A DNA stretch of 64,000 nt from the sequence record MK250027.1; one strand, given 5' to 3'. A program made the translations under genes and the position numbers. Positions 1-59,634 of the stretch are shown here, piece by piece (the stretch's first letter is position 1; every line of letters starts with the position of its first letter). Below the pieces are notes generated by a model. That model saw only the letters and a program-made list of their open reading frames with translations, was not told where the DNA came from and did not search any database.

Positions 1-3000
1 TCATATTAGGTTGTAATTGTTTAAATGATGTCCCAAGCTATTCTATAAAATTACCAAATGAAGCTGATACAAATATAGCAGATGTAAAGAATATAGAAGG
101 GTCAACCTATTCATATTCAGGTTTACCATTTTTATCATATCCTGTTACTATTTGCATCGTTGCAACTTTAATAACTGTATCAACAAATTTAGAAACTGCA
201 TCCATAACGGGTTCCATTACCTATCCAACAGTAGATATTGCTAACATTGCATTAACTGACATCTTATCAAACGCGTCACTTAAACATTGTAAAAATATGC
301 TAAACTATACAGATATAGCAAGAGCTGCGTTACTAAATTCTGTTGCTGTTAATTTCTTATATATTGGGTTCTTCTTATTATCATATCCTATAATATATGT
401 TCCTGTTGCTAGTTTCATTACAACATCTACAAATTTTCCAACAGTATCAATAATAGGATTAAGCGCTAATGTTAACACGCTTAATACAACAAGTTTTAAA
501 GCAACCATTGCGTTAAATCCGGCACTTAATTTAGAAATAAATGTTGTAAATCCATTTGTAACTGCTTCTGCTGCCTATTCAAATACAGTTGCTGGTAAAT
601 GTTCATACATAGGTTTACCATTATCATCATATCCTGCTATATAATTCATTGTAGCAACTTTCATTATAATATCAATATATTTTGATATTGTATTTAATAT
701 AGGTCTTAATGCTAATGAAATAACTAATGCCATTGCAGTTCCATTAAAACCGCTAAATGCTTTAACAATAGCTTGCATAGATCCTAAAACACTATTTTTA
801 TCATCATTACCTTTACCTATCATCAATTCAGAAAATGTTTGAATCATCTTAGCATTACATATTTCTGTTATATATTTCATCTCAGAAACAGTTAATGCTA
901 ATACACCAAATACTGCCATAATAATAGGTGAAAAAGCTGCTGCCGCTGTTGCCTATACCATCTATACAGGATTTGGAGCTGCTGCTTTTATAACATCAAA
1001 CATTACTTCAAATAATGTTACTGCAGTCTCCCCTGTTTTTTTAAGTTTCTCAGTATTATATGGTAACATTAATTCCAACGCTTTCATGAATAATATCATG
1101 GTTCCTGTTACAACAGTCATCACACCTGCAATTGCCGTCATTACTACAGCACCTAATGTAATAAATGGAAGAATAGGCGTCATCGCACCTAATGCAGTCA
1201 TAAATGTTCCCATAATAGTTAACAAACCTATCATTGTAGCTGCACCTAAAAATACTGCGCCACCTTTATTTAAATCATCAATTTTCTTTGCTTCCCATGC
1301 GAATAAAACCATTGTTCCTCCAACAATATCCATCACTGCACCAATAGCGGACATAACAATACCACCTATAATAGTATCTGGTAAAAATTTCTCTAATTTA
1401 GAAACACCGTACATTACCAAACCCATTAGACCTAAAACACCTGCCATAACAGCAGCACCTAAAAATACTGCACCACCTTCATTTAATTCTAATATTTTCT
1501 TAGATTCTATTGCAAATGCTAAACATGCAGTCCCTATTACTAACATAACTATTGCAACTGCAGTCATAATAACTGCACCAACTGCTAATTCAACTGCATA
1601 CTTATCTGCGAATTTTCCTATAAAGAATAATACAGTTCCAAATATCGCTAATGTTCCTATCACAACACCTGCACCTATTAATGCGTCGTCCCACATTTTA
1701 CCAATAGGAATCAATATATCTTTAACAATCAATGATATACCTAATAAAATAAATGCCATTGCCGCTGTTGCAAATATTGCATATGCTGCTTTCTTACCAT
1801 CTACTTTAGCCAAGAAATAAGTACCTGCAATAAGAGTAATAATAATGAATAATGTAATACCCATTCCTATACCTGCTTCTTTACCATTCTAACCTATAGG
1901 AATAAGTAAATCTTTTGTAATCAATGCAATACCCATATAAATAATTGCAAGAGTAGCAGTAGCAAGAACACCCCATAAGGCTTTCTTTCCATTTACCATA
2001 TTCAATACATAAACGCCTGCAACTAATCCTGCTATTATAAACATTGTTACTATTGCACCTAAATAAACTTCCGGCGCTTTCTTTCCAATAGGTATTAAAA
2101 ACGCAACAGATATAATAGCAACCAATGCAAACACAGCAGATATTTTAATAAGATTATTTACCCCTCTATCTATACGTTTACCATGTTTATCTAATGATTT
2201 AACTGCAAATATGCCTAATGCTATAATAAAAGATATAACCAACGCACCTTTTGATACATCATCTAATCTCTTGCCAATAGGTGCCAATAATGTTGCTGAC
2301 ACCAAAGCTATAATTGCAAATACAGCAGAAATCTTTAACATTGCATCTGTAGCGTATGTTAATTTCTTATTACCTATTTTAGACAATTTATTAACAATGA
2401 AAATAGTTCCTGCAGTAAATAATGTAAGTATTCCTATAGATGCAAGTATAGTTTCCGTACTATTATTTTTAACAGTTAACGATAATAATAACATTGATAC
2501 AGATAATGACATAATCATTATTCCAATACCAGTTAAAACACCCTGTACATTTTTAAGGCTCTTATCTAATTTCTTCTCTGATAAATCTTCTATCAAACTC
2601 TTAAATCCAGAAACAGCAACTCTCATAACAATTAAACTTGCTACAACTGCAGTTAATCCAACAATCTTAGTTACAATAGATAATCCTATAATAATACCGC
2701 CTATCATACCTATTGCTGAACTTAAACTTCTTATTATCACCTATGCTCCTTTTACATCTTTAACTTTTAATTTTTTAGCTAAATCTGTAATAGTATTCTT
2801 CATGAATTTAATCAAATACCTAACTACTAAAACAGATTCAATTATTGTTTTAAAAGATGTTAGCTTAATAGTTAATGCAATGAATACAATACCGTATAAT
2901 AATGTTTTCAATGCATTATTCCATGCATTCATAAAAGATGATAAAACTTTAACTTGTTTTACATCCCATTTTTCTTTTAATATTGTGTTAAAGAAATCTA

Positions 3001-4081
3001 CTATTTTCTATGCACGTTTCTGTGTTAATGATTTTACAGCAAACATGAAATTAAGAATCTATATCTTCTTAATATCAAATATTACATTTAATAGCTATAC
3101 CATACTATTAACAGTTTGTGCAACCGTTTTATTATCTGGTATTTCCGTTGCAAATGCGACAAAGAAACTCGCAAGCATTTTAGCAGTAATAGGATTCAAT
3201 ACCTTCATTACTTTAAATATAGAAAACTTCTATTCAGGATCTGCTATCTTTACTAAAGGATCTAATATACCACCAATATATTTAACGTTCTCACTTATTT
3301 CTTTTCCTTTTAAATATTTAGCGATCTATCCTATGAACTAACCTAATTGTCTGCCTAATAACCAACCTCTTATAGGATTAAGACTTATCTACATTTTAAA
3401 AACATTTGATGTTACCAATGCGGATAATCCTCCCATCAAGTCTCCAATGGGTTTAATTATTTTTTGAATATCTTTATTTTTTAATTTCGTTTTACTAATA
3501 GACGAAACTAATGCAGATATAAATTTGCCTAAACGTTGTGCAGTTTTAACATCAAGCTTCCCAATATTTTCCTATAACTTAATCATATCAAGAGCAACAA
3601 GTTTGGACATTGTTTCAACAACTGCTTTAATTATACCGACACTTCGTCCTACTGATTTAGAATTCTATATTGTTAACCCTTGTATAAAATCAACTATTTT
3701 TTTTGCGCCTTCTGCATTTATTTCTGTCATTTTATTAATAGCTTTCAGAAAACTATCAATATTTGTAAATGTATTGTCATCAACTTTAAGACTTGATAAA
3801 ACTGTATTTACATTTCCTATAGATGTGGCAACTTTATTCAAAACATCATTGTCAATCTATTCCATGGATACAAGTCCTTTTGACAACTTCTCCAACTATT
3901 CTCCAACAGTTGCTGCTGATTCCTCTTTAGCAGTCTCAACGATACCCTATAACAAACTGATTATAGTAGAATCAGCTTTCTGTTCAATAGTTTCTTTCTT
4001 TTTCTCCTATTGCTGACTTACCATAGTGTCCAAAATATTAAATATACCGTTAAGTGCTTCTTCTGAAGACATTTGTGCCAT
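1..4081 (-). CDS. Tape-measure-like large hydrophobic repeat protein (>1360 aa, runs off the window start; TAG read-through)
   Basis: Track ORFs 2741..2932, 1889..2740, 962..1864, 575..919 and 305..508 share one frame and are separated only by TAG. ATG at 4081 (MAQMSSEEALNGIF), at least 15 in-frame TAG, no TAA/TGA seen in frame. Ala/Gly/Ile-rich helical repeats of 64, 71 and 82 aa. Confidence 0.6.
120..2275 (-). repeat. Protein-level tandem repeats inside the tape-measure-like gene
   Basis: GYD-x-x-(G/K)-(K/N)-P-x-Y motif at an exact 246-nt period (ends 142, 388, 634). PIG motif at 192/192/189-nt spacing (1700, 1892, 2084, 2273). GGAVFLGAA twice, 213 nt apart. Confidence 0.85.
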
Positions 4082-6810: not shown

Positions 6811-7077
6811 ATGACCCATATTCATTATAATATAACAAGTACACATGTTAATCCAGAAATTCCAGGTGATAATATAGAAATTCATGAACCAAAGGAAAAA
6901 CCGGTTGAGAAAATACCTGGTTGGATGCATGTAGATCCTATAAGTACATAGATAGATTTAGAATCTGTTGCTTATCAATTATCAGATTATAAATTTACAC
7001 CAGGGTTTAAAGTTACTGTAGATGATTTACTTCATCCAAAACCTTTAGATTATGAGGCAACACCTAAATTTAAATAA
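6811..7077 (+). CDS. Hypothetical protein, 88 aa (one TAG; absent from track)
   Basis: MTHIHYNITSTHVNPEIPG...ST(TAG)IDLESV...ATPKFK-TAA, followed by a terminator. Confidence 0.65.
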
Positions 7078-7080
7078 ATG

Positions 7081-7112
7081 AAAGAGGAATAACAAGCAAG
7101 TTATTCCTCTTT
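7081..7112. terminator. Bidirectional intrinsic terminator
   Basis: Perfect 13-bp inverted repeat AAAGAGGAATAAC/GTTATTCCTCTTT between convergent genes. Confidence 0.8.
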
Positions 7113-7125
7113 TTATATTCTATAA

Positions 7126-7407
7126 TTAAATAGAATAATTAATATTCATAATATCAAAAAGTTGATTAAGATGATCTGTTGTTTGAACTTCTACAGATGC
7201 AACAGTATTATGTTCATCATTATCAATAATACATGTCCAATTTCTTCCTACCATATTTGTTTGTAAATTATGAATAGTTATTGTAAATGTATGATTAAGT
7301 TCTCCTACAGTTTTATAAAAGTAATCTGCTTCATCAAAATCTGCAAAACCTTTATCATGATTATATTCAAATTTATGAAATAAAAGTAAATCCTTTGTAA
7401 TATCCAT
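7126..7407 (-). CDS. Hypothetical protein
   Basis: 93-aa ORF, last gene of the operon under the promoter at 8787. Confidence 0.75.
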   Translation of the reverse strand: MDITKDLLLFHKFEYNHDKGFADFDEADYFYKTVGELNHTFTITIHNLQTNMVGRNWTCIIDNDEHNTVASVEVQTTDHLNQLFDIMNINYSI

Positions 7408-7417
7408 GTTTAATTAT

Positions 7418-8272
7418 TTAATCTTCATCATTTAAATCCTCAAATTCTTCATATGATAATAGTAATTTATCATATTCTTTAATCATTGTAGATAAAATTT
7501 GTTTTTGCTCTGATACATATTGTTTATCAAAATGCCAACATTGTCCTGCATATTTACATGGAATAAACATACCGTTTTGACTTTCTAACATTATACAGAA
7601 TGATGCCCAATTTACAACTGATTCTGAAAGTTCTTTCCAATTTATAGTTGAATTATTATAAAAACTCATAACACCATTCATTTGAGAAAATTGATTCCAA
7701 CAATAATTATATGGCATATAGTCTCTATATTCATCACTATTTAAATCTGTGACAACAAATAGTATACCTCCAGTAAATTCATTAAATACATTATCGCCTA
7801 CACCAATCAATTCCAAACATTTCTTCATCTTTGGAATTTCATATGTCATTGCTTTATATATAGAATATTTCTCATATATAACAGTATATTCATATTTTTC
7901 TGAAGTATGAAATACTGAACACATTTTTGTTATATTTTCAAAAAGTGTTTTAATATTATCTTTTTGTTCTTCATATGAAACATATTTATTATAATCTCGT
8001 AATATCGTAGATATAATATTATTAAATTTCATATTTAATTTTCCCTCTATCATTCGAGTGGTTTCATCCTCTTCATATTCAAAATCATCACTACCTCCAT
8101 ACTCATCCATATATCCTATAACAGGAATATGCATAGGTATTAATGGACTTTCTAAATAAGTAGGATTATTTCCAAGTTTATGCTTATTTCTACGACAAAT
8201 AATAGCAATTACTTTCTCTCTATTCCTTATTGGAATTCTTGAATGAAATCCAGATACACAAAAATCACCCAT
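7418..8272 (-). CDS. Hypothetical protein
   Basis: 284-aa ORF, no TAG. Confidence 0.8.
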   Translation of the reverse strand: MGDFCVSGFHSRIPIRNREKVIAIICRRNKHKLGNNPTYLESPLIPMHIPVIGYMDEYGGSDDFEYEEDETTRMIEGKLNMKFNNIISTILRDYNKYVSYEEQKDNIKTLFENITKMCSVFHTSEKYEYTVIYEKYSIYKAMTYEIPKMKKCLELIGVGDNVFNEFTGGILFVVTDLNSDEYRDYMPYNYCWNQFSQMNGVMSFYNNSTINWKELSESVVNWASFCIMLESQNGMFIPCKYAGQCWHFDKQYVSEQKQILSTMIKEYDKLLLSYEEFEDLNDED

Positions 8273-14158: not shown

Positions 14159-14222
14159 TAAACATCAAAATTGTGGTTCTAAATCTTACTGCTACTTACT
14201 AAGACTACAATTTTGATGTTTA
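14159..14222 (-). terminator. Terminator closing non-coding locus 1
   Basis: 16-bp inverted repeat TAAACATCAAAATTGT/ACAATTTTGATGTTTA followed on the minus strand by TTTTTTATT. Confidence 0.7.
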
Positions 14223-14896
14223 TAAAAGCAATCATTCATTATCCTGCAGCATCCATATTAGTATAAGTTTCATTGCAATAGAACTTTACAACTATAGTGA
14301 TAATCCACTTATACATTCTTTTACTCTAAAGTCTTTTATATAACTTTATCATACATAATATATGTACTGTCCATCAATAAAAGGTTCTTTATTTCATCAT
14401 GGTTTTATATCGTATAAACAACCCTCTGTATATCACTGATTCATTTCTTTACATTTAGAAATCAGGGTCTTTAAGCCTCAACGTTTGGCTGTAACTATTA
14501 TCCTCAACCATTACCAGATAATGTCATCTTGTTTTTGTGGTGCATCTCACATACCTCCTTTAATCATAAAACAAGCAAAACTACTAAGACAAATAACGTT
14601 TCTTAGAACTTCTACGAATTTACGCTCATATCAAATCATCATCTGATATAGACACCTAAATTAAGTGAATAAAGTTTACGACTCAATATAAAATTTTATA
14701 TCTCAACCTTTATCAAAAATGATTCATTAAATTCTTTTAAGGAACTTATTTCTAATTAAATGAAGGATTCATTTAAAATAGGTTCTCCCGAAAACATGCG
14801 GTTTATCCTTACTCATTATAATTATAATAAGCGTTGTTTATAGCACTCATTAGAATTCATTATGTATTATCTAACTCTCATTTATAATATTCATAA

Positions 14897-14925
14897 TTTA
14901 TATGATATTAAAAGCAAAATGTCTA
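14897..14925 (-). promoter_or_regulatory. Class II promoter TAGACA-N17-TATAAA
   Basis: Exact spacing; second promoter for ncRNA 1. Confidence 0.5.
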
Positions 14926-14967
14926 ATATCATATTATAAATTATTTGTCTCGTTAGATATTATCAAA

Positions 14968-14981
14968 ATTTCAAAGATCTC
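14968..14981 (-). promoter_or_regulatory. rRNA-leader-type boxA antitermination motif GAGATCTTTGAAAT
   Basis: About 25 nt downstream of the class I promoter; near-identical GAGTTCTTTGAAAT heads ncRNA 2. Confidence 0.55.
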
Positions 14982-15005
14982 TTCATTGTTATTTTATTAA
15001 CAATA

Positions 15006-15013
15006 CAAAGATA
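15006..15013 (-). promoter_or_regulatory. Class I host-type promoter driving ncRNA 1
   Basis: GTGTATCTTTGTA with no ORF downstream for about 900 nt. Confidence 0.75.
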
Positions 15014-15065
15014 CACATTCTTTTTTAATAAAAAAAATATTCTAAGAAAAAATTAAAAATATTTT

Positions 15066-15866
15066 TTATCTTACAAAACATGTTGCATATCCATGTTCAA
15101 CCTTAATAAATAATACTTCACCATTTAACCACAATTTATCAAATGGCGTTTTATCACCATTTTCTTGCATATCTTTATGTTCATCAATAGCATATTTCTC
15201 AATGTCATCAATACTACCTTTATAATAATTCTTTATGTTATCAGATTCAAGATATGCAATTCGCGACTTACATTCGTCAAGAAGTTCTTCAAATACAGGA
15301 ACAGATTTATTACAAAATCTGTCATACTCATTCTGAAAATTAATATTAGATGAACAAATACCATTTGTAATAATACGAGATACATTTTCAAGTTTCTCTA
15401 GATTATCAAGGTCTACATAAAAATCATCGCATGTAATATCATTATCTTTATACATACCAATAACATGAACTTTTGCATTCCATAATTCACACCATTTATT
15501 TGCACCATCTTCTATAAGCTGTCCAAAATCATTATCATGAAAATCAAACATAATCATGAAATTTTTATCAACCTTAATATCACTAGTTTCATATGGATCA
15601 CCTTTATACTTATGACCATCATAAAGACCTGTAAGATATGAAGAACGACTTATCCTTAAAATCTCTTTCAAACAAAAATCCTTAATTTTTTTATATTCTT
15701 CATCATTTAGATTATCAGTTCCATCAAGCAAATCTAATACTGAGTCATAATATTTTTCTTCATTTTTTACATAGTCATAAGACATATCTACAAATGGCTT
15801 GCCGAACATACGAATTTCAGATTTATTCATATCTTCTTGCATCTTCTTAAGATCTATTTCTTTCAT
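15066..15866 (-). CDS. Hypothetical protein
   Basis: 266-aa ORF. Confidence 0.8.
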   Translation of the reverse strand: MKEIDLKKMQEDMNKSEIRMFGKPFVDMSYDYVKNEEKYYDSVLDLLDGTDNLNDEEYKKIKDFCLKEILRISRSSYLTGLYDGHKYKGDPYETSDIKVDKNFMIMFDFHDNDFGQLIEDGANKWCELWNAKVHVIGMYKDNDITCDDFYVDLDNLEKLENVSRIITNGICSSNINFQNEYDRFCNKSVPVFEELLDECKSRIAYLESDNIKNYYKGSIDDIEKYAIDEHKDMQENGDKTPFDKLWLNGEVLFIKVEHGYATCFVR

Positions 15867-15879
15867 ATTTCTTAATTAT

Positions 15880-16821
15880 TTACATTGTTCCATCATTAGG
15901 TTGCAAACACATAATTCCACGTTCTCGCCACATCTTAACCACTTTAGAAGAATCTTCCAATACAAACAATACATTATAATAAGGTTCAATATATTCCTTA
16001 TATAAATTATATTTACAATCTGGACCCTTTGTAAAATTCTTCAAAGGTCTCATTAACACCTTATCAACATTACCAATAAGGTTATTCTTCAACCAATCTT
16101 CTGTTGCATGTCTAATATCGTCTGTATCTTCTCTACCTGTCAATATAATGACATCCACTGATTTATCGGCAATATATGTATTAACAAGTTGGCAAAGTTG
16201 CTTACATGGTTTATCATCCCTCATGCTATCAGCAGCACCATTACCATAAAATGGCCGACCTTGAAGATTAAAACAAAGTGTAGCATCCATATCTACAAGA
16301 ATACAATTCTTCTTCGTTTCATCAAACTTCTTAAAGCTATTATATTGCTTATTATTAAGTTGTGTAGCAATAAAGTTTCTATATCGCCTATAAGTAGATT
16401 TGATAACGGATTCACCTATAGGATTAGATCTAAATGAATCTCTTCTAATACATTCCTCTACCGATACATCAAAGAAATCCTTAAATTCCAATGTATAATG
16501 ATACTCATTATGTGTCTCATTATACTTATCAATTCTATCTTGCATTTCTTTCCATCCCTTTGGATTCAGGTTCATATTATCCATAATGATATTCCAACCT
16601 TTTTCCATAGGTGATTTAAAAAATGCATCTGTCATATCTTTAATAACAGAAAGTTTCTCACGTGATTCTACCCAATACTCACCGAACATGTTTCTAAGAG
16701 AATCCCAATTAATTCTAATTCTCTCAGTTGGTTTCTCCTTTACCCAATGTTCAGCGAATGTAGACTTACCAGACGCTTGAATACCTCTTGTCAATATAAT
16801 TACCCTTTCTTTCATATTCAT
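15880..16821 (-). CDS. pseT: Polynucleotide kinase/3'-phosphatase (T4 PseT-like)
   Basis: P-loop GIQASGKST, RINWDSLR, CIRRD; HAD domain ILVDMDATL...LTGR...LEDSSKVVKMWR. Confidence 0.9.
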   Translation of the reverse strand: MNMKERVIILTRGIQASGKSTFAEHWVKEKPTERIRINWDSLRNMFGEYWVESREKLSVIKDMTDAFFKSPMEKGWNIIMDNMNLNPKGWKEMQDRIDKYNETHNEYHYTLEFKDFFDVSVEECIRRDSFRSNPIGESVIKSTYRRYRNFIATQLNNKQYNSFKKFDETKKNCILVDMDATLCFNLQGRPFYGNGAADSMRDDKPCKQLCQLVNTYIADKSVDVIILTGREDTDDIRHATEDWLKNNLIGNVDKVLMRPLKNFTKGPDCKYNLYKEYIEPYYNVLFVLEDSSKVVKMWRERGIMCLQPNDGTM

Positions 16822-16841
16822 ATTTTATTTAATTAGCAATA

Positions 16842-16849
16842 CAAAGATA
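16842..16849 (-). promoter_or_regulatory. Class I host-type promoter TATCTTTG
   Basis: ATGTATCTTTGTA upstream of pseT. Confidence 0.8.
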
Positions 16850-16991
16850 CATAATTTTTAGGAAAATAAAAAATTAATTATTATCAAATACTATATTTTC
16901 AACAAAATTAAGTTTCTTATAATTTCTATTCTTTGAATACTTATCGATTATTTTTAAAAAATCGACCATAAATCTATAATCAAATTCTGGT

Positions 16992-17210
16992 TTATTCATC
17001 TTTTAACATCATTGCAAGAATAACAGATTTCATACATGTCATATATCCTTTAAGATACATATCTTTCAACATCAACCAAATTCTTTCAAATTCATCTGGT
17101 ATCTTTTCACTTGTATCATCAGATATATTAGAGTTACCGACAATAGTTTTAAGCTCTCGCCGTGCTTGATAATCAGCCATTGCATTTAATTTATTCTTAT
17201 TAAATTCCAT
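16992..17210 (-). CDS. Hypothetical protein
   Basis: 72-aa ORF. Confidence 0.7.
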   Translation of the reverse strand: MEFNKNKLNAMADYQARRELKTIVGNSNISDDTSEKIPDEFERIWLMLKDMYLKGYMTCMKSVILAMMLKDE

Positions 17211-17213
17211 ATT

Positions 17214-17903
17214 TTATTTAGATTTTAATCCTAAACAATATTCTTTATTAATATTATCAATAAAAGAATTAATTCTAATTCTTAGTAATTCTGATTCTTC
17301 TTCAAATTCCTTAATTTTATCAATGTCTTTTTTAATATCATCTATATTATGATTTAACAAATATTCATACGTATTAGGTTTAGATACTTTAAAATAATAA
17401 ATATCTTCATTCATAATATTATTATGATTTAAAGCACATAATAAATGATAAGATTCCTCATTTGCAGATGAACCATGATAACCATATCCATCACTTTCAA
17501 AATATATACATAATGGTCCATAACTATAATGTCCACCTGGATATACAGTTGTTCTTAATGAGTTAATATGAAATGATTTACATATATTATATTTCTTATC
17601 TAAATAATCATTCAATAACTTATTAATACTCATCATTTGAAGATCTAATAATCTATCTAAATTTATATCATTATTCTTACTTATATATACACTGGAAACT
17701 TCTTTTACAACTGAATCAATATCTAATTCATAATTCTCGTCTGTATATAAATGAAGAATACAAAGAAATAATCTATGTATATATTCTTTCTTATCGTAAT
17801 TTATATATGCAGTTTTTAATTTTTCTACATAATCATCTGTCACCTTCTTATTGATGTTATATTCGATATTCTTTATAAATTCTTTTTGCTCATTCTATGT
17901 CAT
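17214..17903 (-). CDS. Hypothetical protein, 229 aa (TAG at codon 3)
   Basis: ATG ACA TAG AAT GAG... is in frame with track ORF 17214..17843, which lacks an ATG start. Confidence 0.7.
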
Positions 17904-17905
17904 AA

Positions 17906-18103
17906 TCATTGCTCTTTTATTTTTCTTAAAATAAATTTAGGTTCTTGATAATAAAAATAATCTATTGTTTTATCATCTATAATGTTCAAATTATATAATG
18001 CTTGTGAAAACCTAATATCCTTATATGTCGTAAGATACTTCTTTAATATATCTAATATTTCCATATTAGCATTGTATCTCTCAAATGTTTCTTTAGTTTC
18101 CAT
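17906..18103 (-). CDS. Hypothetical protein
   Basis: 65-aa ORF in a tightly coupled operon. Confidence 0.7.
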   Translation of the reverse strand: METKETFERYNANMEILDILKKYLTTYKDIRFSQALYNLNIIDDKTIDYFYYQEPKFILRKIKEQ

Positions 18104-18501
18104 TAGAATAACGGATTAATTTTTATCTCGTTTGTTTTACTATATTCTTGTACATCTAAATTCAATGTTTCATTTAGCCAATCAGCAATTAAATGTCTGT
18201 GACAAAATTCATCTGGTTTTTCAAAACAACATAAAGCACAATCTTTATTACCTGTTATAAACTTTAATCTATCTATAAATAAAGTTGGTTCTTTAAATAT
18301 AGATAAAACTTCAGCTTTATATCGTTTTCTAAACTCTTGATGATTGCTTCTACAATTATTCAATATATCTGGTGTAGGTGCGATACTTGCTAAGTTAACC
18401 CCTTTGAAATCATTTGGCGGATAACAACACACACCTATAGGAATAATATTATTCTTTATAAGATTATTAATATTACCAAAATAGCTTGTATATATTTTCA
18501 T
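18103..18501 (-). CDS. DUF488-like protein
   Basis: MKIYTSYF...LAPT...Y...L...ALCCFEKPDEFCHRHLIADWL pattern. Confidence 0.7.
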   Translation of the reverse strand: MKIYTSYFGNINNLIKNNIIPIGVCCYPPNDFKGVNLASIAPTPDILNNCRSNHQEFRKRYKAEVLSIFKEPTLFIDRLKFITGNKDCALCCFEKPDEFCHRHLIADWLNETLNLDVQEYSKTNEIKINPLF

Positions 18502-18710
18502 ACACGAAATAAACTATATATTTCATTATAAGTTTCTTTTGATATTGGATATGATACTATATTACAATATTCTCCGAAATTCTGATCAACATCTACCATA
18601 TAACCTTGTTTATATGTATCATAATAGCATCTTACTATATGTGAAACATTAACTAAACCTGAATATGTATCAATAAATTTATTATAATTTTTATTTTTTA
18701 ACTTAATCAT
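18498..18710 (-). CDS. Hypothetical protein, 70 aa
   Basis: Start moved from 18902 to ATG 18710 (MIKLKNK) because the upstream part overlaps a real plus-strand gene. Confidence 0.6.
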   Translation of the reverse strand: MIKLKNKNYNKFIDTYSGLVNVSHIVRCYYDTYKQGYMVDVDQNFGEYCNIVSYPISKETYNEIYSLFRV

Positions 18711-18769
18711 AATACTAAAACTATATAACTTAATGTTTATATAATATATAAATGTTTTTGTTTTATTTA

Positions 18770-19093
18770 ATGGGAGGTTTTGTTTATTTAATTTGCGATC
18801 CTGAATAGAATTGTTATAAAATAGGTGTAACAAGGAATATAGCATAGAATAGATTAAAGTAGTTATAGACTGGTAACTCATCAAAATTACATATGGTTTC
18901 AAATATATATTGTGAATATCCTTTTAGACTTGAAACAATGTTACATAATAAATTCAATCATAAACGTGCAAATGGTGAATGGTTCTATTTAGAATAGGAA
19001 GATATAAGTAATTTTAAAACTATATGTGAAGAAACAATATAGATGATTAATGTAATGAAAGATAATCCATTCTTTAGTAAAGATTTAAAATGA
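18770..19093 (+). CDS. T5orf172/MUG113-like GIY-YIG-related protein, 107 aa (six TAG; absent from track)
   Basis: MGGFVYLICD...YKIGVT...NRLK(TAG)L(TAG)TGN...ETMLHNKF...NGEWFYL; the canonical motif is RLKQLQTGN. Confidence 0.85.
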
Positions 19094-19136
19094 ATAAAGG
19101 TGATATAAGAATAATAAAACTTATATCACCTTTATT
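19093..19136. terminator. Bidirectional terminator
   Basis: 17-bp perfect inverted repeat AATAAAGGTGATATAAG/CTTATATCACCTTTATT. Confidence 0.8.
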
Positions 19137-19137
19137 T

Positions 19138-19413
19138 TTAATTATCGTTCTTTTCTAATTCCTTATTAATATAATCCATATCTTCATCTGTTAAATCGCC
19201 AAATGATGTGAATAAATCTTTATTAATAAGTCCATATCTCATAAGATATGCTAATGTCATTCTTACAGCATAATCTGCAATATCATAAGTTGTTGTAACT
19301 TCTAAATTTTGTAAATCTGGATTATTACCAACTACATTAGAAACTTTATCAACAATCTTATCACATGTTTTTTTCATTGAATTTAATTCATTATTTGTTA
19401 ATTTGGTACTCAT
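19138..19413 (-). CDS. Hypothetical protein, 91 aa
   Basis: Start reassigned to ATG 19413 (MSTKLTNNE); the track start lies inside a terminator hairpin. Confidence 0.7.
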   Translation of the reverse strand: MSTKLTNNELNSMKKTCDKIVDKVSNVVGNNPDLQNLEVTTTYDIADYAVRMTLAYLMRYGLINKDLFTSFGDLTDEDMDYINKELEKNDN

Positions 19414-19469
19414 AATATCATTAAATAATTTAATTATTATATTACAACGATATGCATAAAGTTTAGAAA

Positions 19470-19510
19470 TAAAAAATGAGTTATTAGACTTATGCACAAT
19501 CTAATAACTC
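19470..19510 (-). terminator. Intrinsic terminator closing non-coding locus 2
   Basis: GAGTTATTAGA/TCTAATAACTC stem followed by ATTTTTT on the minus strand. Confidence 0.8.
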
Positions 19511-20575
19511 ACAAACACTTTATTCTAAATTTATTATATTTACATCTTATTTAAAGATGTCCCTCATGTTGTTATTCGTACGAACATAAGTTTCTGCCTC
19601 TTATGATTCACTTTAACGTTTGCCCGTTATATAATGAATGTTCATACTGAACTTCGTTATGTCCATAAGGACAAATGGCTGAGAACTTGACCAACACCTA
19701 CTCTCAATGCTGTAACGTTGGAGTTACATGTTCACACAACTCTTATTTCTAAGAGGTTGAGAGCATACCCACGACTTTTGTAAAAAATCGTAAACTCTTA
19801 CTTGATAGGTTTCATAGAAATTCATTTCATACCAACTTCCTTGGAAGGATTCAATGTGTCCCCACATTTAGCACGATACTACTCTTACTATTCTCATGTC
19901 TTTCCTTGCGGTACTCGAATCATGTCTACATATTACAGTAGAATAAGGGTATTTTAACCACCAAGTGTCGCACACTTTTGCTTATACATAATTATATGTT
20001 AAATAAAATAATTTCCAATATTATTATTCTTATTATATATTCTTTAGACTTGAAAGACGAGGTGCGACCAATAGCATTTCTTCCTTTTGAGAAGAACCCA
20101 CTAAATCGCCTTTCTGAAATTTCGTTACACCAATGTAACCATATTTCTACTCTTATAACTTACCTATTGTTTTTCAATAGTAATCTTACCATTTCTGAAC
20201 AAGTTACCAGCTTGTATAAATTATTTGGTTTATAATTTATATAAGATTCATTATAACAATTAATATTAGCACTGGGAATTGGTATTCCGATCACTAAATA
20301 TCCATAAACTTAAACTTCTATTGTATTACTACTCACATCAGTTGTCTATCAAACTTCCAATGTATATAAACTTCATCTCAGGAATTATCCCATCAATTTC
20401 CCATTTATACAGGCACTTACTAAGTTTGGTTTTCTGTAGAATGCTCATTATTCATAAACATCGATAAACATGTCTACTGTTTACCTTTATCACATCACTG
20501 CTTTATCCTTACCCCACCGAAACCATGGGTTTATATTTCAAAGAACTCATCTTGAATAAAATAAATTCATTCAAA
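19478..20575 (-). ncRNA. Candidate large ornate ncRNA 2 (about 1.05-1.1 kb, GOLLD/ROOL-class or new)
   Basis: All three minus frames are closed by TAA/TGA within 20281-20340. Clearly raised GC. Hairpins CC-GCAA-GG, GTCC-TTAT-GGAC, GTAAC-TCCAAC-GTTAC, GTTACA-TTGG-TGTAAC, TCTAC/GTAGA. Tandem promoters, boxA and terminator. Confidence 0.7.
20535..20548 (-). promoter_or_regulatory. boxA-like motif GAGTTCTTTGAAAT
   Basis: At the 5' end of ncRNA 2; matches the motif at 14968-14981. Confidence 0.55.
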
Positions 20576-20585
20576 TTTTATACTT

Positions 20586-20614
20586 ATTATATAATCAATA
20601 ATTTAAAAAGTCTA
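20586..20614 (-). promoter_or_regulatory. Class II promoter TAGACT-N17-TATAAT (proximal promoter of ncRNA 2)
   Basis: Perfect consensus with a 17-nt spacer. Confidence 0.7.
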
Positions 20615-20701
20615 TATTTTAATAGATATATTTCAAAATTTTTATTGTTAACTGTTATTAAAAATATTAAATATTAAAATCTTTTTAAACTTGATTCTAA
20701 A

Positions 20702-20730
20702 TTTATATATTAAATTAAATAGAAAGTCTA
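20702..20730 (-). promoter_or_regulatory. Class II promoter TAGACT-N17-TATAAA (distal promoter of ncRNA 2)
   Basis: 17-nt spacer; tandem with 20586-20614. Confidence 0.55.
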
Positions 20731-22199: not shown

Positions 22200-22633
22200 N
22201 NNNNNNNNNNNNNNNNNNNNNNNNNNNNNNNNNNNNNNNNNNNNNNNNNNNNNNNNNNNNNNNNNNNNNNNNNNNNNNNNNNNNNNNNNNNNNNNNNNNN
22301 NNNNNNNNNNNNNNNNNNNNNNNNNNNNNNNNNNNNNNNNNNNNNNNNNNNNNNNNNNNNNNNNNNNNNNNNNNNNNNNNNNNNNNNNNNNNNNNNNNNN
22401 NNNNNNNNNNNNNNNNNNNNNNNNNNNNNNNNNNNNNNNNNNNNNNNNNNNNNNNNNNNNNNNNNNNNNNNNNNNNNNNNNNNNNNNNNNNNNNNNNNNN
22501 NNNNNNNNNNNNNNNNNNNNNNNNNNNNNNNNNNNNNNNNNNNNNNNNNNNNNNNNNNNNNNNNNNNNNNNNNNNNNNNNNNNNNNNNNNNNNNNNNNNN
22601 NNNNNNNNNNNNNNNNNNNNNNNNNNNNNNNNN
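22200..22633. other. Assembly gap
   Basis: 434 N. Confidence 1.
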
Positions 22634-58430: not shown

Positions 58431-59634
58431 TATTATTTTCTAAATATTCATTTATTATAGTTTTTATTATTTCTATCTTATTGCTCCATATAGGAAGATA
58501 ATTCAGATTATTCATTTTCGCAGTTTGACATTTAAAAGGATCAATGATTGACCAAACATTTACAGCAGATTTATATTGTTTTGATATTTCTGCTTTTTGT
58601 TTCCACTTATTTAATAAATCAATATCATCTTTATTATCTTCATCAAATAAATGTTTCCCATGTGTCCAAAATGCGTTTATCTCTATAAATAAATCTAATG
58701 GTTTTATATAGAAATCTACATGGAATGGATAACGCTCATCAACATTTACATTAAACTATATATCATCTTTATCAAATATTGTTTGTAAATATTCATATGT
58801 TTGATATTCTGGTTTTGACATACCAAAATTATCTTTATATTTTTTCTTTATTGTTTTTACATATTGATCAAACTAATATTGATGAAAATTTTCTAATGAA
58901 CCATATTTTTTAATAACAGTTTCTTTTGTCTTTTCTTTATTATTAAATGTTGGATCCCCATATAATTCTAATTTTGTTTCTTTAATTTTGTTTTTTATTT
59001 CTTCATTTTTTGCAGGGTTATCAACGCCATATTTTTTAATAACAGTTTCTCTTGATTTTTCTTTATTATTATCTGACTAAAAACTATATTTACACCCATA
59101 TTTTTTTAAACATGTATTAATTGATTTCTATTTAACTTCTTCATTCTATCCTGAAAATTCTACANNNNNNNNNNNNNNNNNNNNNNNNNNTGTCTTCTAT
59201 AAATATTCCGATGTTTTTGTATATGATGAAACTCCATATTTTTCTAAACATGTTTGTTTTATTTTATCTTTAACTGATTTTAACTACATTTGATGTTCAA
59301 CACCATATCGTTCTTTTAATGTATTTTTTATTTTATTCTATACATTAACTGAATTCATTACACATCGTGAATTTGAACAAAATTTACGAAATCCTCTACT
59401 ATAACAATTAAATCTCACAGGTTTCCCACATGTTTCACATACTGGTCTTATTTCTATTTTATTTACAATACGGTATATTGTCTCCTATATAGATTCGCTA
59501 TCATTATATCTATTAATTAAATAATCATAAATATCTTGATGTTTATTTAACCAAGATAATCTTGTATAATTTTTTGCTAACTAATTCTTTTTTGTTATAA
59601 ATTTTTCTTTTATGTAGTCATCATTAATAATCAT
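58414..59634 (-). CDS. Vsr-like homing endonuclease with KYG repeats (many TAG; spans a 26-N gap; absent from track)
   Basis: YLINRYNDSESI(TAG)ETIYRI, CETC, TCLEKYGV repeats, YPFHVDFYIK...FIEINAFWTH...AKMNNLNYLPIW. Confidence 0.8.
59165..59190. other. Assembly gap
   Basis: 26 N inside the KYG repeat region. Confidence 1.

What the first reader, a model, noticed from the sequence alone, without database searches (positions are those of the whole stretch)
14160..20730. Two paralogous large non-coding RNA loci with rRNA-operon-like control
Seen: the two ORF-free minus-strand loci (14160-14990 and 19478-20575) share ordered 5' motifs. Locus 1 / locus 2: GAGATCTTTGAAAT / GAGTTCTTTGAAAT; GAGTAAGGATAAA / GGGTAAGGATAAA; TTGATAAAGGT / GTGATAAAGGT; ATGAGC in both; TTCTAAGAAA / TTCTACAGAAA; CTTAGTAG..GCTTGT / CTTAGTAAG.GCCTGT. 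Each has two promoters and a strong terminator. Known: GTTCTTTGAAA-type boxA marks rRNA leaders for Nus-dependent antitermination, and giant ornate RNAs (GOLLD, ROOL) occur in phages and form RNA-only multimeric cages. Inference: the phage transcribes two related large RNAs like rRNA, possibly a short and a long form with different timing (RNA 1 has a host-type promoter, RNA 2 only class II promoters), which might co-assemble. This is the best candidate for an undescribed system here.
Basis: partly seen in the sequence, partly recalled or inferred. Interest (0 to 1): 0.9.

Follow-up and report, generated by a model that had tools for sequence, protein, structure and literature searches.

The report
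GOLLD-type giant RNA in Lak megaphage
In this Prevotella megaphage, one gene-free stretch encodes a very abundant RNA of about 1 kb that is a divergent member of the GOLLD family (phage RNAs known to build RNA-only cages). The other stretch encodes an unrelated, unclassified abundant RNA, and both carry the boxA-like leader signal also found on the phage's tRNA operons.

Summary
The window is Prevotella megaphage Lak-B. Both loci have no long ORF in code 11 or with TAG=Q. They are more conserved between Lak clades than the neighbouring genes. In RNA libraries of several studies, assembled contigs lie on them and hardly on the genes between.

Locus 2 (about 20575-19585, minus strand) is a divergent GOLLD RNA. 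Rfam's GOLLD model matches 20114-19676 over its full length (62.8 bits, E 1e-15). This is below the 150-bit curated cut-off, so wide scans miss it. Relatives in rumen and gut contigs form a subfamily with strong covariation in both the 5' and 3' domains.

Locus 1 (about 14946-14160) has no Rfam match and no homolog outside Lak. Its structure has only modest support.

The claimed paralogy fails every test: BLAST, shuffled alignments, profile searches both ways and a covariance model.

The shared GTTCTTTGAAAT motif is real. It occurs five times in 249 kb of a sister genome, always in the leader of a stable-RNA unit (three before tRNA clusters, plus both loci). It is therefore a shared boxA-like transcription signal, not evidence of common descent.

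Verdict: a new variant of a known RNA family, plus one unexplained abundant RNA.

The parts
20701..20730 (-). Distal sigma-70-like promoter-like site of locus 2 (TAGACT-N17-TATAAA)
   Evidence: Motif scans. The same ATATAGACTTT word precedes a tRNA-Glu gene in the sister record G001. Function is inferred.
20586..20614 (-). Proximal promoter-like site of locus 2 (TAGACT-N17-TATAAT)
   Evidence: 10 of 12 consensus positions. Conserved in the Lak-A/C orthologs. Lies about 10-40 nt upstream of the start of the RNA-library contig.
20535..20546 (-). boxA-like leader motif GTTCTTTGAAAT of locus 2
   Evidence: Invariant in all Lak clades. One of five exact copies in 249 kb of G001, all in stable-RNA leaders.
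19585..20575 (-). Locus 2 RNA, about 0.99 kb: a divergent GOLLD-family RNA
   Evidence: A 971-nt contig from RNA library X1 covers exactly 19592-20561. 91% identical to Lak-A against 63-80% for neighbouring genes. GOLLD model match.
20115..20534 (-).
   Evidence: Aligns with the 5' regions of rumen and gut relatives. 67 predicted pairs, 44 with compensatory changes, 0 of 300 shuffles reach the observed values.
19676..20114 (-). 3' domain: full-length match to Rfam GOLLD (RF02032, model positions 1-416)
   Evidence: 62.8 bits, E 1e-15. 62 predicted pairs, 39 with compensatory changes, covariation score 0.534 against 0.194 +/- 0.017 in shuffles, 0 of 500 reach it.
19991..20050 (-). AT-rich variable linker inside the 3' domain (approximate limits)
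   Evidence: Aligned to the unstructured variable stretch of the Rfam model. The most variable part between Lak clades and among relatives. Corresponds to the disordered linker of solved GOLLD (PMC12286853).
19900..19917 (-). Invariant 18-mer CGAGUACCGCAAGGAAAG (GNRA-capped hairpin module)
   Evidence: Identical in all relatives of the locus-2 type. Also present in classical GOLLDs, but there directly 5' of the Rfam model start.
19476..19512 (-). Intrinsic terminator of locus 2
   Evidence: 15-pair stem followed by a T-run. Lak-A/C have a different hairpin plus T-run at the same place.
15001..15013 (-). Host-type (Bacteroidetes TAnnTTTG) promoter-like site of locus 1
   Evidence: The word TATCTTTGTATTG recurs before coding genes and before tRNA operons. 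Function is inferred.
14968..14979 (-). boxA-like leader motif of locus 1 (GATCTTTGAAAT here; GTTCTTTGAAAT in G001 and Lak-A/C)
14897..14925 (-). Second, sigma-70-like promoter-like site inside the locus 1 leader (TAGACA-N17-TATAAA)
   Evidence: Pattern scan only. Function not shown.
14160..14946 (-). Locus 1 RNA, about 0.75-0.8 kb: an abundant unclassified RNA; conserved core 14880-14225, terminator 14222-14160
   Evidence: A 770-nt contig from RNA library X1 starts near 14946, and a contig from library X3 lies on 14701-14869. Eight RNA runs of two studies hold parts of it. 83% identical to Lak-A. No Rfam match. Modest structure support.
15880..16821 (-). Polynucleotide kinase-phosphatase (an RNA end-healing enzyme) between the two RNA genes
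   Evidence: Pfam HAD_PNKP 3.2e-25 plus an AAA_33 kinase domain. Context only; no link to the RNAs is shown.
18103..18501 (-). DUF488-family protein between the two RNA genes
   Evidence: Pfam DUF488-N3a 1e-11. Context only.

Best explanation
The window comes from Prevotella megaphage Lak-B. Locus 2 is a stable RNA gene of about 0.99 kb on the minus strand. It appears to be transcribed from a sigma-70-like promoter through a boxA-like leader to an intrinsic terminator.

The RNA is a divergent member of the GOLLD family. It has a 5' domain of about 420 nt, and a 3' domain of about 440 nt that fits the whole Rfam GOLLD model, pseudoknot and conserved loops included. An AT-rich variable linker sits where the solved GOLLD has its disordered, cage-interior linker. 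By homology with the solved GOLLD 14-mer, I infer that it self-assembles into a multimeric RNA-only cage during infection. This step is not shown here. What the cage does is unknown for the whole family.

Locus 1 is a separate RNA gene of about 0.75-0.8 kb. It is abundant in RNA libraries, conserved only within Lak phages, probably structured, and of unknown class.

The two RNAs are not paralogs. What they share is a transcription signal, GTTCTTTGAAAT placed about 20-45 nt downstream of the promoter-like site. The phage also places it in front of its tRNA operons. It matches the boxA element of bacterial rRNA leaders, a recognition made from memory of the Bacillus-type boxA. The likely role is to recruit host Nus factors so that RNA polymerase reads through long, untranslated, highly structured transcripts. 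This role is inferred, not shown.
For: Identity of the genome: 100% matches to Lak-B2, B4, B7 and B8.

Non-coding status: no long ORF in either code.

Expression. In RNA library X1, the only contigs on the 6 kb examined are a 971-nt one covering 19592-20561 and two over locus 1 (770 nt on the RNA, 151 nt on its promoter region); nothing lies on 15241-19440. RNA libraries X3 and X4, from other studies, also have contigs on locus 2, and X3 on locus 1. The probable source DNA run X15 covers most of the stretch at modest depth, locus 2 no deeper than the genes. Further RNA runs hold parts of both loci. Devoto et al. reported highly expressed intergenic regions in Lak-A (10.1101/356790).

Conservation: locus 2 is 91% and locus 1 83% identical to Lak-A1, against 63-80% for four neighbouring genes.

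GOLLD assignment. RF02032 matches window 20114-19676 over model positions 1-416 at 62.8 bits, E 1e-15. A distant relative, L059 (GC 0.49), gives 56.6 bits, E 6e-14, also full length. Classical GOLLDs above the Rfam cut-off turned up in the same 18-mer scan. Covariation supports the 3' domain (39 of 62 pairs compensatory, 0 of 500 shuffles reach it) and the 5' domain (44 of 67 pairs, 0 of 300).

Family traits from PMC12286853: longer than 800 nt, phage-borne, conserved 3' region and variable 5' region, variable linker, highly expressed.

boxA-like signal: 5 of 5 exact copies in 249 kb lie in stable-RNA leaders, with 0.14 expected by composition.

Structure of locus 1. Substitutions between Lak-B and Lak-A keep predicted pairs in 34 of 74 cases, against 100 of 364 in coding controls (Fisher p 0.002). 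Two-sided changes are kept in 10 of 13 cases.
Against: The GOLLD score is far below Rfam's curated cut-off (62.8 against 150 bits), with 17.6 bits of composition bias in the AT-rich Lak sequence. Sequence-only profiles of the locus-2 subfamily do not reach classical GOLLDs beyond the 18-mer. That 18-mer sits at a different position in classical GOLLDs.

There are no tRNA genes in the 64-kb window, whereas GOLLDs usually sit near tRNA islands.

Cage formation, strand and transcript ends are not shown directly. The run evidence is assembled contigs, which give neither strand nor true ends.

Minimum-free-energy z-scores do not separate the RNAs from a coding control: -1.7 and -4.0 against -3.7.

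The structure evidence for locus 1 rests on essentially two lineages.

The boxA reading was not tested. I could not examine host rRNA leaders, and no Nus binding data exist.
Confidence: 0.8

Rival explanations
1. One reading: loci 1 and 2 are paralogs, a short and a long form of one RNA family, that may co-assemble.
For: Ordered short motifs are shared. Two of them (TAAGGATAAA, GATAAAGG) are conserved elements of the GOLLD 5' domain in relatives of locus 2. In G001, 3 of 4 copies of TAAGGATAAA lie in stable-RNA regions. The two loci keep the same orientation and conserved synteny in Lak-A/C.
Against: There is no similarity beyond chance by blastn, shuffled local alignment, reciprocal profile HMMs or a covariance model. 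Motif spacing differs about three-fold. Several motifs are not conserved in the orthologs. Locus 1 has no match to the GOLLD model. Inter-RNA duplex energy equals that of shuffles.
Confidence: 0.07
2. Locus 2 is an unrelated structured RNA, and the GOLLD model match is a chance or composition artefact.
For: The score is well under the gathering threshold. The bias term is 17.6 bits. Wide scans were blank. nhmmer does not link the subfamily to classical GOLLDs.
Against: E is 1e-15 with end-to-end model coverage. Conserved loops are kept exactly (UCAAAAG, AAGCAAAAGU, CUCAGCC) and the long-range pseudoknot helix is intact. An independent relative with normal GC and zero bias scores 56.6 bits, E 6e-14, again full length. 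Size, two-domain layout, linker, phage origin and abundance all fit. One relative, L150, sits in a tRNA island.
Confidence: 0.04
3. Locus 1 is not a functional structured RNA. It is instead a long leader or mRNA for a micropeptide, or the transcribed remnant of a decayed gene.
For: A perfect AGGAGG lies 8 nt before a 13-codon ORF that stays in frame in Lak-A, with 3 of 6 changes synonymous. Structure support is modest, rests on two lineages, and the MFE z-score is only -1.7. There is no homolog outside Lak.
Against: Nucleotide identity of 83% over about 700 nt exceeds that of the neighbouring genes. Ten compensatory pairs are seen, and 10 of 13 two-sided changes keep pairing, against 33 of 76 in coding controls. 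It carries the stable-RNA leader motif. The neighbouring genes show no evident Shine-Dalgarno sequence upstream (by eye; that Bacteroidetes rarely use one is from memory). The tiny ORF covers only 42 of about 750 nt.
Confidence: 0.12
4. The loci are self-splicing introns, mobile-element RNAs or degenerate rRNA fragments.
For: Lak phages have tRNA introns (PMC6784885). An endonuclease-like gene lies between the loci. The 18-mer resembles a 23S rRNA segment (my recollection).
Against: There is no group I or II intron, rRNA or other Rfam match at E up to 10 in targeted scans. The LSU rRNA model finds nothing in the sister genome, and there is no E. coli rRNA similarity. The flanking ORFs are complete separate genes rather than split exons. 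Each locus has its own promoter-like sites and terminator.
Confidence: 0.02

Closest known systems
GOLLD RNA (Rfam RF02032; Weinberg et al. 2009; cryo-EM 14-mer cage of GOLLD env-38, Kretsch et al. 2025, PMC12286853)
   Same: Locus 2 matches the whole covariance model, pseudoknot and signature loops included. It has the two-domain layout with a variable internal linker. It is longer than 800 nt, phage-encoded and very abundant in RNA libraries. A subfamily relative lies in a tRNA island.
   Different: The score is 57-63 bits against a 150-bit cut-off, so it escapes standard annotation. It belongs to a distinct gut and rumen subfamily. In this subfamily the invariant 18-mer module sits inside the 3' domain instead of just before it. 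There is no tRNA in the linker or nearby. It is very AT-rich, is preceded by a boxA-like leader, and resides in a 550-kb megaphage. Cage formation is untested.
ROOL RNA (Rfam RF03087), the other phage RNA known to form a cage
   Same: A large, ornate, phage-borne, abundant RNA of unknown function. This is the kind of RNA that locus 1 could turn out to be.
   Different: Neither locus matches the ROOL model at E up to 10 in targeted scans.
boxA / Nus-factor antitermination of rRNA operons (and the lambda nut site)
   Same: A 12-nt motif close to the Bacillus-type boxA (TGTTCTTTGAAAA; from memory) lies shortly after the promoter-like site of long untranslated transcripts. It is confined to stable-RNA units in this genome.
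   Different: Here it is on phage tRNA operons and on two large non-coding RNAs, not on rRNA. No boxB or boxC was identified. The host leader sequence and Nus binding were not examined.
[quoted passage not shown] 2019, PMC6784885; preprint 10.1101/356790)
   Same: [quoted passage not shown]
   Different: That work did not classify the regions. Here one is assigned to GOLLD, one is delimited but left unclassified, and their shared leader signal is described. None of the top-ranked papers in a search combining GOLLD with megaphage, jumbo phage, Prevotella or crAss terms mentions GOLLD, and the GOLLD cryo-EM paper names neither Prevotella nor megaphages.

Membership tests
GOLLD RNA (RF02032) | Score at or above Rfam's curated gathering threshold (150 bits) | tested here: not met
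   62.8 bits for locus 2 and 56.6 bits for relative L059. No hit in the gathering-mode scan of the window.
GOLLD RNA (RF02032) | Statistically significant end-to-end fit to the family's sequence-and-structure model, including the pseudoknot and conserved loops | tested here: met
   Model positions 1-416 of 416, E 1e-15. UCAAAAG, AAGCAAAAGU and CUCAGCC are kept, and the 9-pair long-range helix is intact. The result is repeated in a relative about 55% identical with zero composition bias.
GOLLD RNA (RF02032) | Conserved 3' domain, less conserved 5' domain and a variable linker; total length above 800 nt | tested here: met
   The 3' domain is 94% and the 5' domain 88% identical between Lak-B and Lak-A. 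The AT-rich linker is the most variable part. The RNA-library contig is 971 nt.
GOLLD RNA (RF02032) | Secondary structure supported by covariation | tested here: met
   3' domain: 39 of 62 pairs compensatory, 0 of 500 shuffles reach it. 5' domain: 44 of 67 pairs, 0 of 300. These structures are RNAalifold predictions on MAFFT alignments, not the published P1-P27 map.
GOLLD RNA (RF02032) | Encoded by phages or prophages, often beside tRNA islands | tested here: inconclusive
   Phage origin is met. There are no tRNAs in this 64-kb window. However, the locus uses the same leader motif as the phage's tRNA operons, and relative L150 lies after 11 tRNA genes.
GOLLD RNA (RF02032) | Self-assembly into a 14-mer RNA-only cage | not testable with these tools
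   Needs in vitro transcription followed by mass photometry or cryo-EM (PMC12286853).
ROOL RNA (RF03087) | Match to the family covariance model | tested here: not met
   No ROOL hit at E up to 10 in targeted scans of locus 1 (861 nt) or locus 2 (1061 nt).
rRNA-type boxA antitermination signal | boxA-like sequence placed in the leader of long untranslated transcripts | tested here: met
   GTTCTTTGAAAT occurs 5 times in 249 kb (0.14 expected), all within about 20-45 nt downstream of promoter-like sites of tRNA operons, locus 1 and locus 2. It is invariant at locus 2 across clades.
rRNA-type boxA antitermination signal | Same motif in the host's rRNA leaders; binding of NusB/NusE; effect on read-through | not tested
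   No Prevotella genome could be reached with the genome tools for a virus window. The literature search gave nothing for Bacteroidota.
   Best blastn E 0.036. Alignment z about 0 against shuffles. Reciprocal profile HMMs are blank. Covariance model R1 gives 10.6 bits, E 7.

The most novel reading that the evidence does not exclude
Locus 1 is the founding member of a new class of large structured phage RNA that works together with the GOLLD-type cage RNA. It could be cargo, a partner, or a second assembly. The megaphage would drive both, and its tRNA operons, through a hijacked boxA/Nus antitermination pathway. That would make GOLLD biology testable as part of a defined stable-RNA regulon in a phage that can be tracked in gut metatranscriptomes.
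Probability: 0.15. Interest if true: 0.8.

Novelty: new variant of a known kind. Interest (0 to 1): 0.6.

Why it matters
It gives an identity to one of the 'highly expressed large intergenic regions' that have been an open puzzle of Lak megaphages since 2019: it is a GOLLD-type RNA.

It shows that a whole gut and rumen branch of the GOLLD family lies below the Rfam cut-off and escapes routine annotation, so the family is broader than catalogued.

The function of GOLLD cages is unknown. A member that is abundant in animal gut metatranscriptomes, sits in a well-sampled phage lineage, and is wired to the same leader signal as the tRNA operons offers a natural system for asking what the cage does.

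The boxA-like motif confined to phage stable-RNA units is a simple, testable hypothesis for how a phage transcribes long structured RNAs without termination.

Locus 1 remains an abundant, conserved RNA of about 0.75 kb with no known relatives. It deserves structural work.

Tried and rejected
1. Wide Rfam scans (64 kb in gathering mode; 7.2 kb in E-value mode) were blank. The GOLLD match appeared only when 0.5-1 kb was scanned alone, so blank wide scans here are not evidence of absence.

2. My first idea, a degenerate 23S rRNA fragment, was prompted by the 18-mer. It was rejected: the LSU rRNA model finds nothing in the sister genome, and there is no E. coli similarity.

3. Paralogy tests were all negative: blastn, shuffled local alignments, reciprocal nhmmer profiles and covariance model R1.

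4. Inter-RNA pairing between loci 1 and 2 by duplexfold was no better than shuffles in Lak-B or Lak-A. Whole-length duplex folding is a blunt test.

5. MFE z-scores were uninformative, because a coding gene scored as low as locus 2.

6. Searches for locus 1 relatives found only Lak. These were two exact-motif scans of viral contigs, profile nhmmer on all fetched loci, and covariance model R2 of its most conserved 140 nt. The best outside hit lies inside a 390-aa ORF and is chance.

7. Sequence-only profiles of the locus-2 subfamily do not reach classical GOLLDs.

8. Most of the 90 metagenome hits to the 18-mer are coding sequences of high-GC bacteria and are irrelevant.

9. The host rRNA leader check was not possible, and the literature searches for a Bacteroidota boxA were unproductive.

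10. Neighbouring proteins are mostly without any family match.

11. The generic sigma-70 scan finds fewer sites than shuffles do in this AT-rich DNA, so it is not evidence on its own.

Full report
**What the window is.** Both loci match Prevotella megaphage Lak-B genomes at 99.6-100% and Lak-A/C at 78-90%. Lak phages read TAG as glutamine, so I checked ORFs in both codes. Neither 14160-14990 nor 19478-20575 holds a long ORF on either strand. GC rises to 0.30-0.38 in the loci against about 0.2 around them.

**Checking the observation.** As evidence of relatedness they do not hold:
- The best blastn match between the loci has E 0.036.
- Local alignment scores under three gap regimes lie within the spread of dinucleotide shuffles, with z between -1.4 and +0.2.
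- Profile HMMs built from the Lak orthologs of each locus find every ortholog but never the other locus.
- A covariance model of the locus-2 segment that carries the motifs, built from six diverse family members, gives locus 1 only 10.6 bits, E 7, rank 18 in the window.
- The motifs span 140 nt in locus 2 and 412 nt in locus 1.
- Motifs 4 and 6 are not kept in the Lak-A/C orthologs.
- In locus 1, motifs 5 and 6 are the two arms of one hairpin that shows a clean C-G to G-C swap between clades.

**The one motif that is clearly non-random.** In a 249-kb sister record (G001, sharing 82% of sampled words with the window), the exact word GTTCTTTGAAAT occurs five times against 0.14 expected. All five lie about 20-45 nt downstream of promoter-like sites, in the leaders of stable-RNA units. 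Three are in front of tRNA clusters, one at locus 2 and one at locus 1. It is invariant at locus 2 in all clades. It is therefore a shared transcription signal of the phage's stable-RNA units. It matches the boxA element of rRNA leaders as I remember it for Bacillus. I could not check the host's own rRNA leaders, so the Nus-antitermination reading is an inference.

[quoted passage not shown] Here, many RNA-library runs from several studies hold parts of locus 2, and eight runs from two studies hold parts of locus 1.

I laid the assembled contigs of three RNA libraries and one probable source DNA run on 14641-20640:
- In RNA library X1, the only contigs are a 971-nt one covering exactly 19592-20561 and two over locus 1: a 770-nt one starting near 14946 and a 151-nt one over its promoter region (14989-15041). 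Nothing lies on the genes between 15241 and 19440.
- In RNA library X3, the locus-2 contig has a word depth near 3800, the locus-1 contig near 280, and the few contigs on the genes 10-42.
- The DNA run covers most of the stretch at 2-20, locus 2 no deeper than the genes.
- Contigs cannot give strand, true ends or reliable levels. Their placement nevertheless argues for two discrete, abundant RNAs.

The strand follows from the promoter-like sites, the terminators and the model match.

**Conservation.** Against Lak-A1, locus 2 is 91% identical (3' part 94%, 5' part 88%) and locus 1 is 83% identical. Four neighbouring genes are 63-80% identical at the nucleotide level.

**What locus 2 is.** Wide Rfam scans were blank. 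A metagenome scan with the invariant core 18-mer CGAGTACCGCAAGGAAAG returned 90 stretches. Most are coding sequences of high-GC bacteria. Two groups mattered:
- One group is classical GOLLD RNAs above Rfam's cut-off (L061 at 183 bits, L080 at 152 bits), with the 18-mer directly 5' of the model start.
- The other is a set of gut and rumen contigs that nhmmer links to locus 2 over up to 830 nt.

Scanning locus 2 alone then gave a full-length match of the GOLLD model (positions 1-416) to 20114-19676 at 62.8 bits, E 1e-15. The signature loops and the long-range pseudoknot helix are kept. A distant subfamily member with ordinary GC (L059) gave 56.6 bits, E 6e-14, also full length and with no composition bias. 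A pattern specific to this subfamily found one further member in a viral contig inside a tRNA island (L150) and one in an Erysipelotrichaceae rumen MAG (L149).

On nine sequences, the 3' domain has 62 predicted pairs. Of these, 39 show compensatory changes, and the covariation score is 0.534 against 0.194 +/- 0.017 in shuffles and about 0.1 for slid partners. The 5' domain also aligns across the subfamily, with 44 of 67 pairs compensatory.

Size, the two-domain layout, the variable AT-rich linker, phage origin and abundance all fit the description of GOLLD in Kretsch et al. 2025 (PMC12286853). That work shows the RNA forming a 14-mer cage with the linker inside.

I therefore file locus 2 as a divergent GOLLD-family RNA. 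It fails the curated score threshold but meets the structural definition. Cage formation is inferred.

**What locus 1 is.** A targeted Rfam scan found nothing. Profile, motif and covariance-model searches found it only in Lak genomes.

A test that avoids circularity supports some structure. I predicted the fold from Lak-B alone and asked whether substitutions in Lak-A keep the pairs. The result was 34 of 74 kept, against 100 of 364 in four coding controls (Fisher p 0.002). Two-sided changes were kept in 10 of 13 cases, against 33 of 76 in the controls (p 0.035). On ten Lak sequences, 10 pairs show compensatory change against 3.7 +/- 1.5 in shuffles. This is modest support and rests on two lineages. 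Free-energy z-scores are useless here, because a coding gene scores as low as locus 2.

I call locus 1 an abundant, conserved, probably structured RNA of unknown class.

**How it most likely works.**
- Shown: two discrete RNA genes, the family assignment of locus 2, and the restriction of the leader motif to stable-RNA units.
- Inferred: polymerase starting at the promoter-like sites is modified at the boxA-like element and reads through the long structured RNA to the terminator.
- Inferred: the locus-2 RNA assembles into a multimeric cage, as its solved relative does.
- Unknown: the cage's role and any role of locus 1.

A polynucleotide kinase-phosphatase and a DUF488 protein lie between the loci, but nothing ties them to the RNAs. 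I found no sign of pairing between the two RNAs.

**Novelty.** None of the top-ranked papers in a search combining GOLLD with megaphage, jumbo phage, Prevotella or crAss terms mentions GOLLD. The cryo-EM paper searched GenBank phage genomes with the Rfam model at E 1e-5 but names neither Prevotella nor megaphages. Whether Lak sequences passed their filters cannot be told.

Locus 2 is a new variant of a known kind, and the existence of highly expressed Lak intergenic regions was already known. Locus 1 and the boxA-like regulon are the parts that could still prove new.

Noticed in passing
window 18752-19093 (+): A 113-codon ORF on the strand opposite to all its neighbours, with six in-frame TAG codons (read as Q). 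It matches phage endonuclease and homing-endonuclease families (best PHROG match 4e-21). By eye it looks like a T5orf172/GIY-YIG-type domain. The local GC skew flips sign here.
   Followed up: partly
L002 about 266-472 (-), equal to G001:C1 about 6985-7190: A tRNA-like element just after tRNA-Val. Matching acceptor arms and a canonical T-arm are separated by an insert of about 130 nt. ARAGORN and Rfam do not call it. It is possibly one of the intron-bearing Lak tRNAs.
   Followed up: partly
window 14504-14559 (-), inside locus 1: A perfect AGGAGG lies 8 nt before a 13-codon ORF (MHHKNKMTLSGNG). The ORF stays in frame in Lak-A/C (MHHKNKKTLSGSA), and 3 of the 6 nucleotide changes are synonymous. 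It could be a micropeptide or just a conserved hairpin region.
   Followed up: no
window 19900-19917 (-); L061 616-633; L080 830-847: The 18-mer CGAGUACCGCAAGGAAAG is identical in the locus-2 subfamily and in classical GOLLDs but sits at different places: inside the 3' domain in the former, directly before it in the latter. It looks like a movable GNRA-capped, loop-E-like module. It resembles a 23S rRNA segment from memory.
   Followed up: partly
G001:C1 1-8300 (loci L037, L002): The tRNA region of the phage holds 14 tRNA genes separated by long non-coding spacers with GC up to 0.44, for example about 400 nt between the promoter at 8142 and the first tRNA. These may be further structured RNAs transcribed behind the same boxA-like leaders.
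   Followed up: no
window 645-1085, 1888-2210, 3342-3863: Three more patches of 320-520 nt without an ATG-started ORF of 50 codons in the Lak code, with GC of 0.29-0.32. They have no boxA-like motif and were not examined further.
   Followed up: no
L116 5516-5591 and L128 7727-7800: In two Lak-A-like metagenome variants, the promoter and leader segment of locus 1 is duplicated in tandem. In L019, L116 and L128, the region upstream of the conserved core is replaced by other sequence. The 5' leader is therefore a recombination hot spot.
   Followed up: no
L052 7077-9650 and other stretches: The rumen contig that carries a locus-2-type GOLLD has several kilobases without ORFs in code 11. This suggests another genetic code or more non-coding RNA.
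   Followed up: no
window 22200-22633 and 59165-59190: Runs of N (masked or gaps).
   Followed up: no
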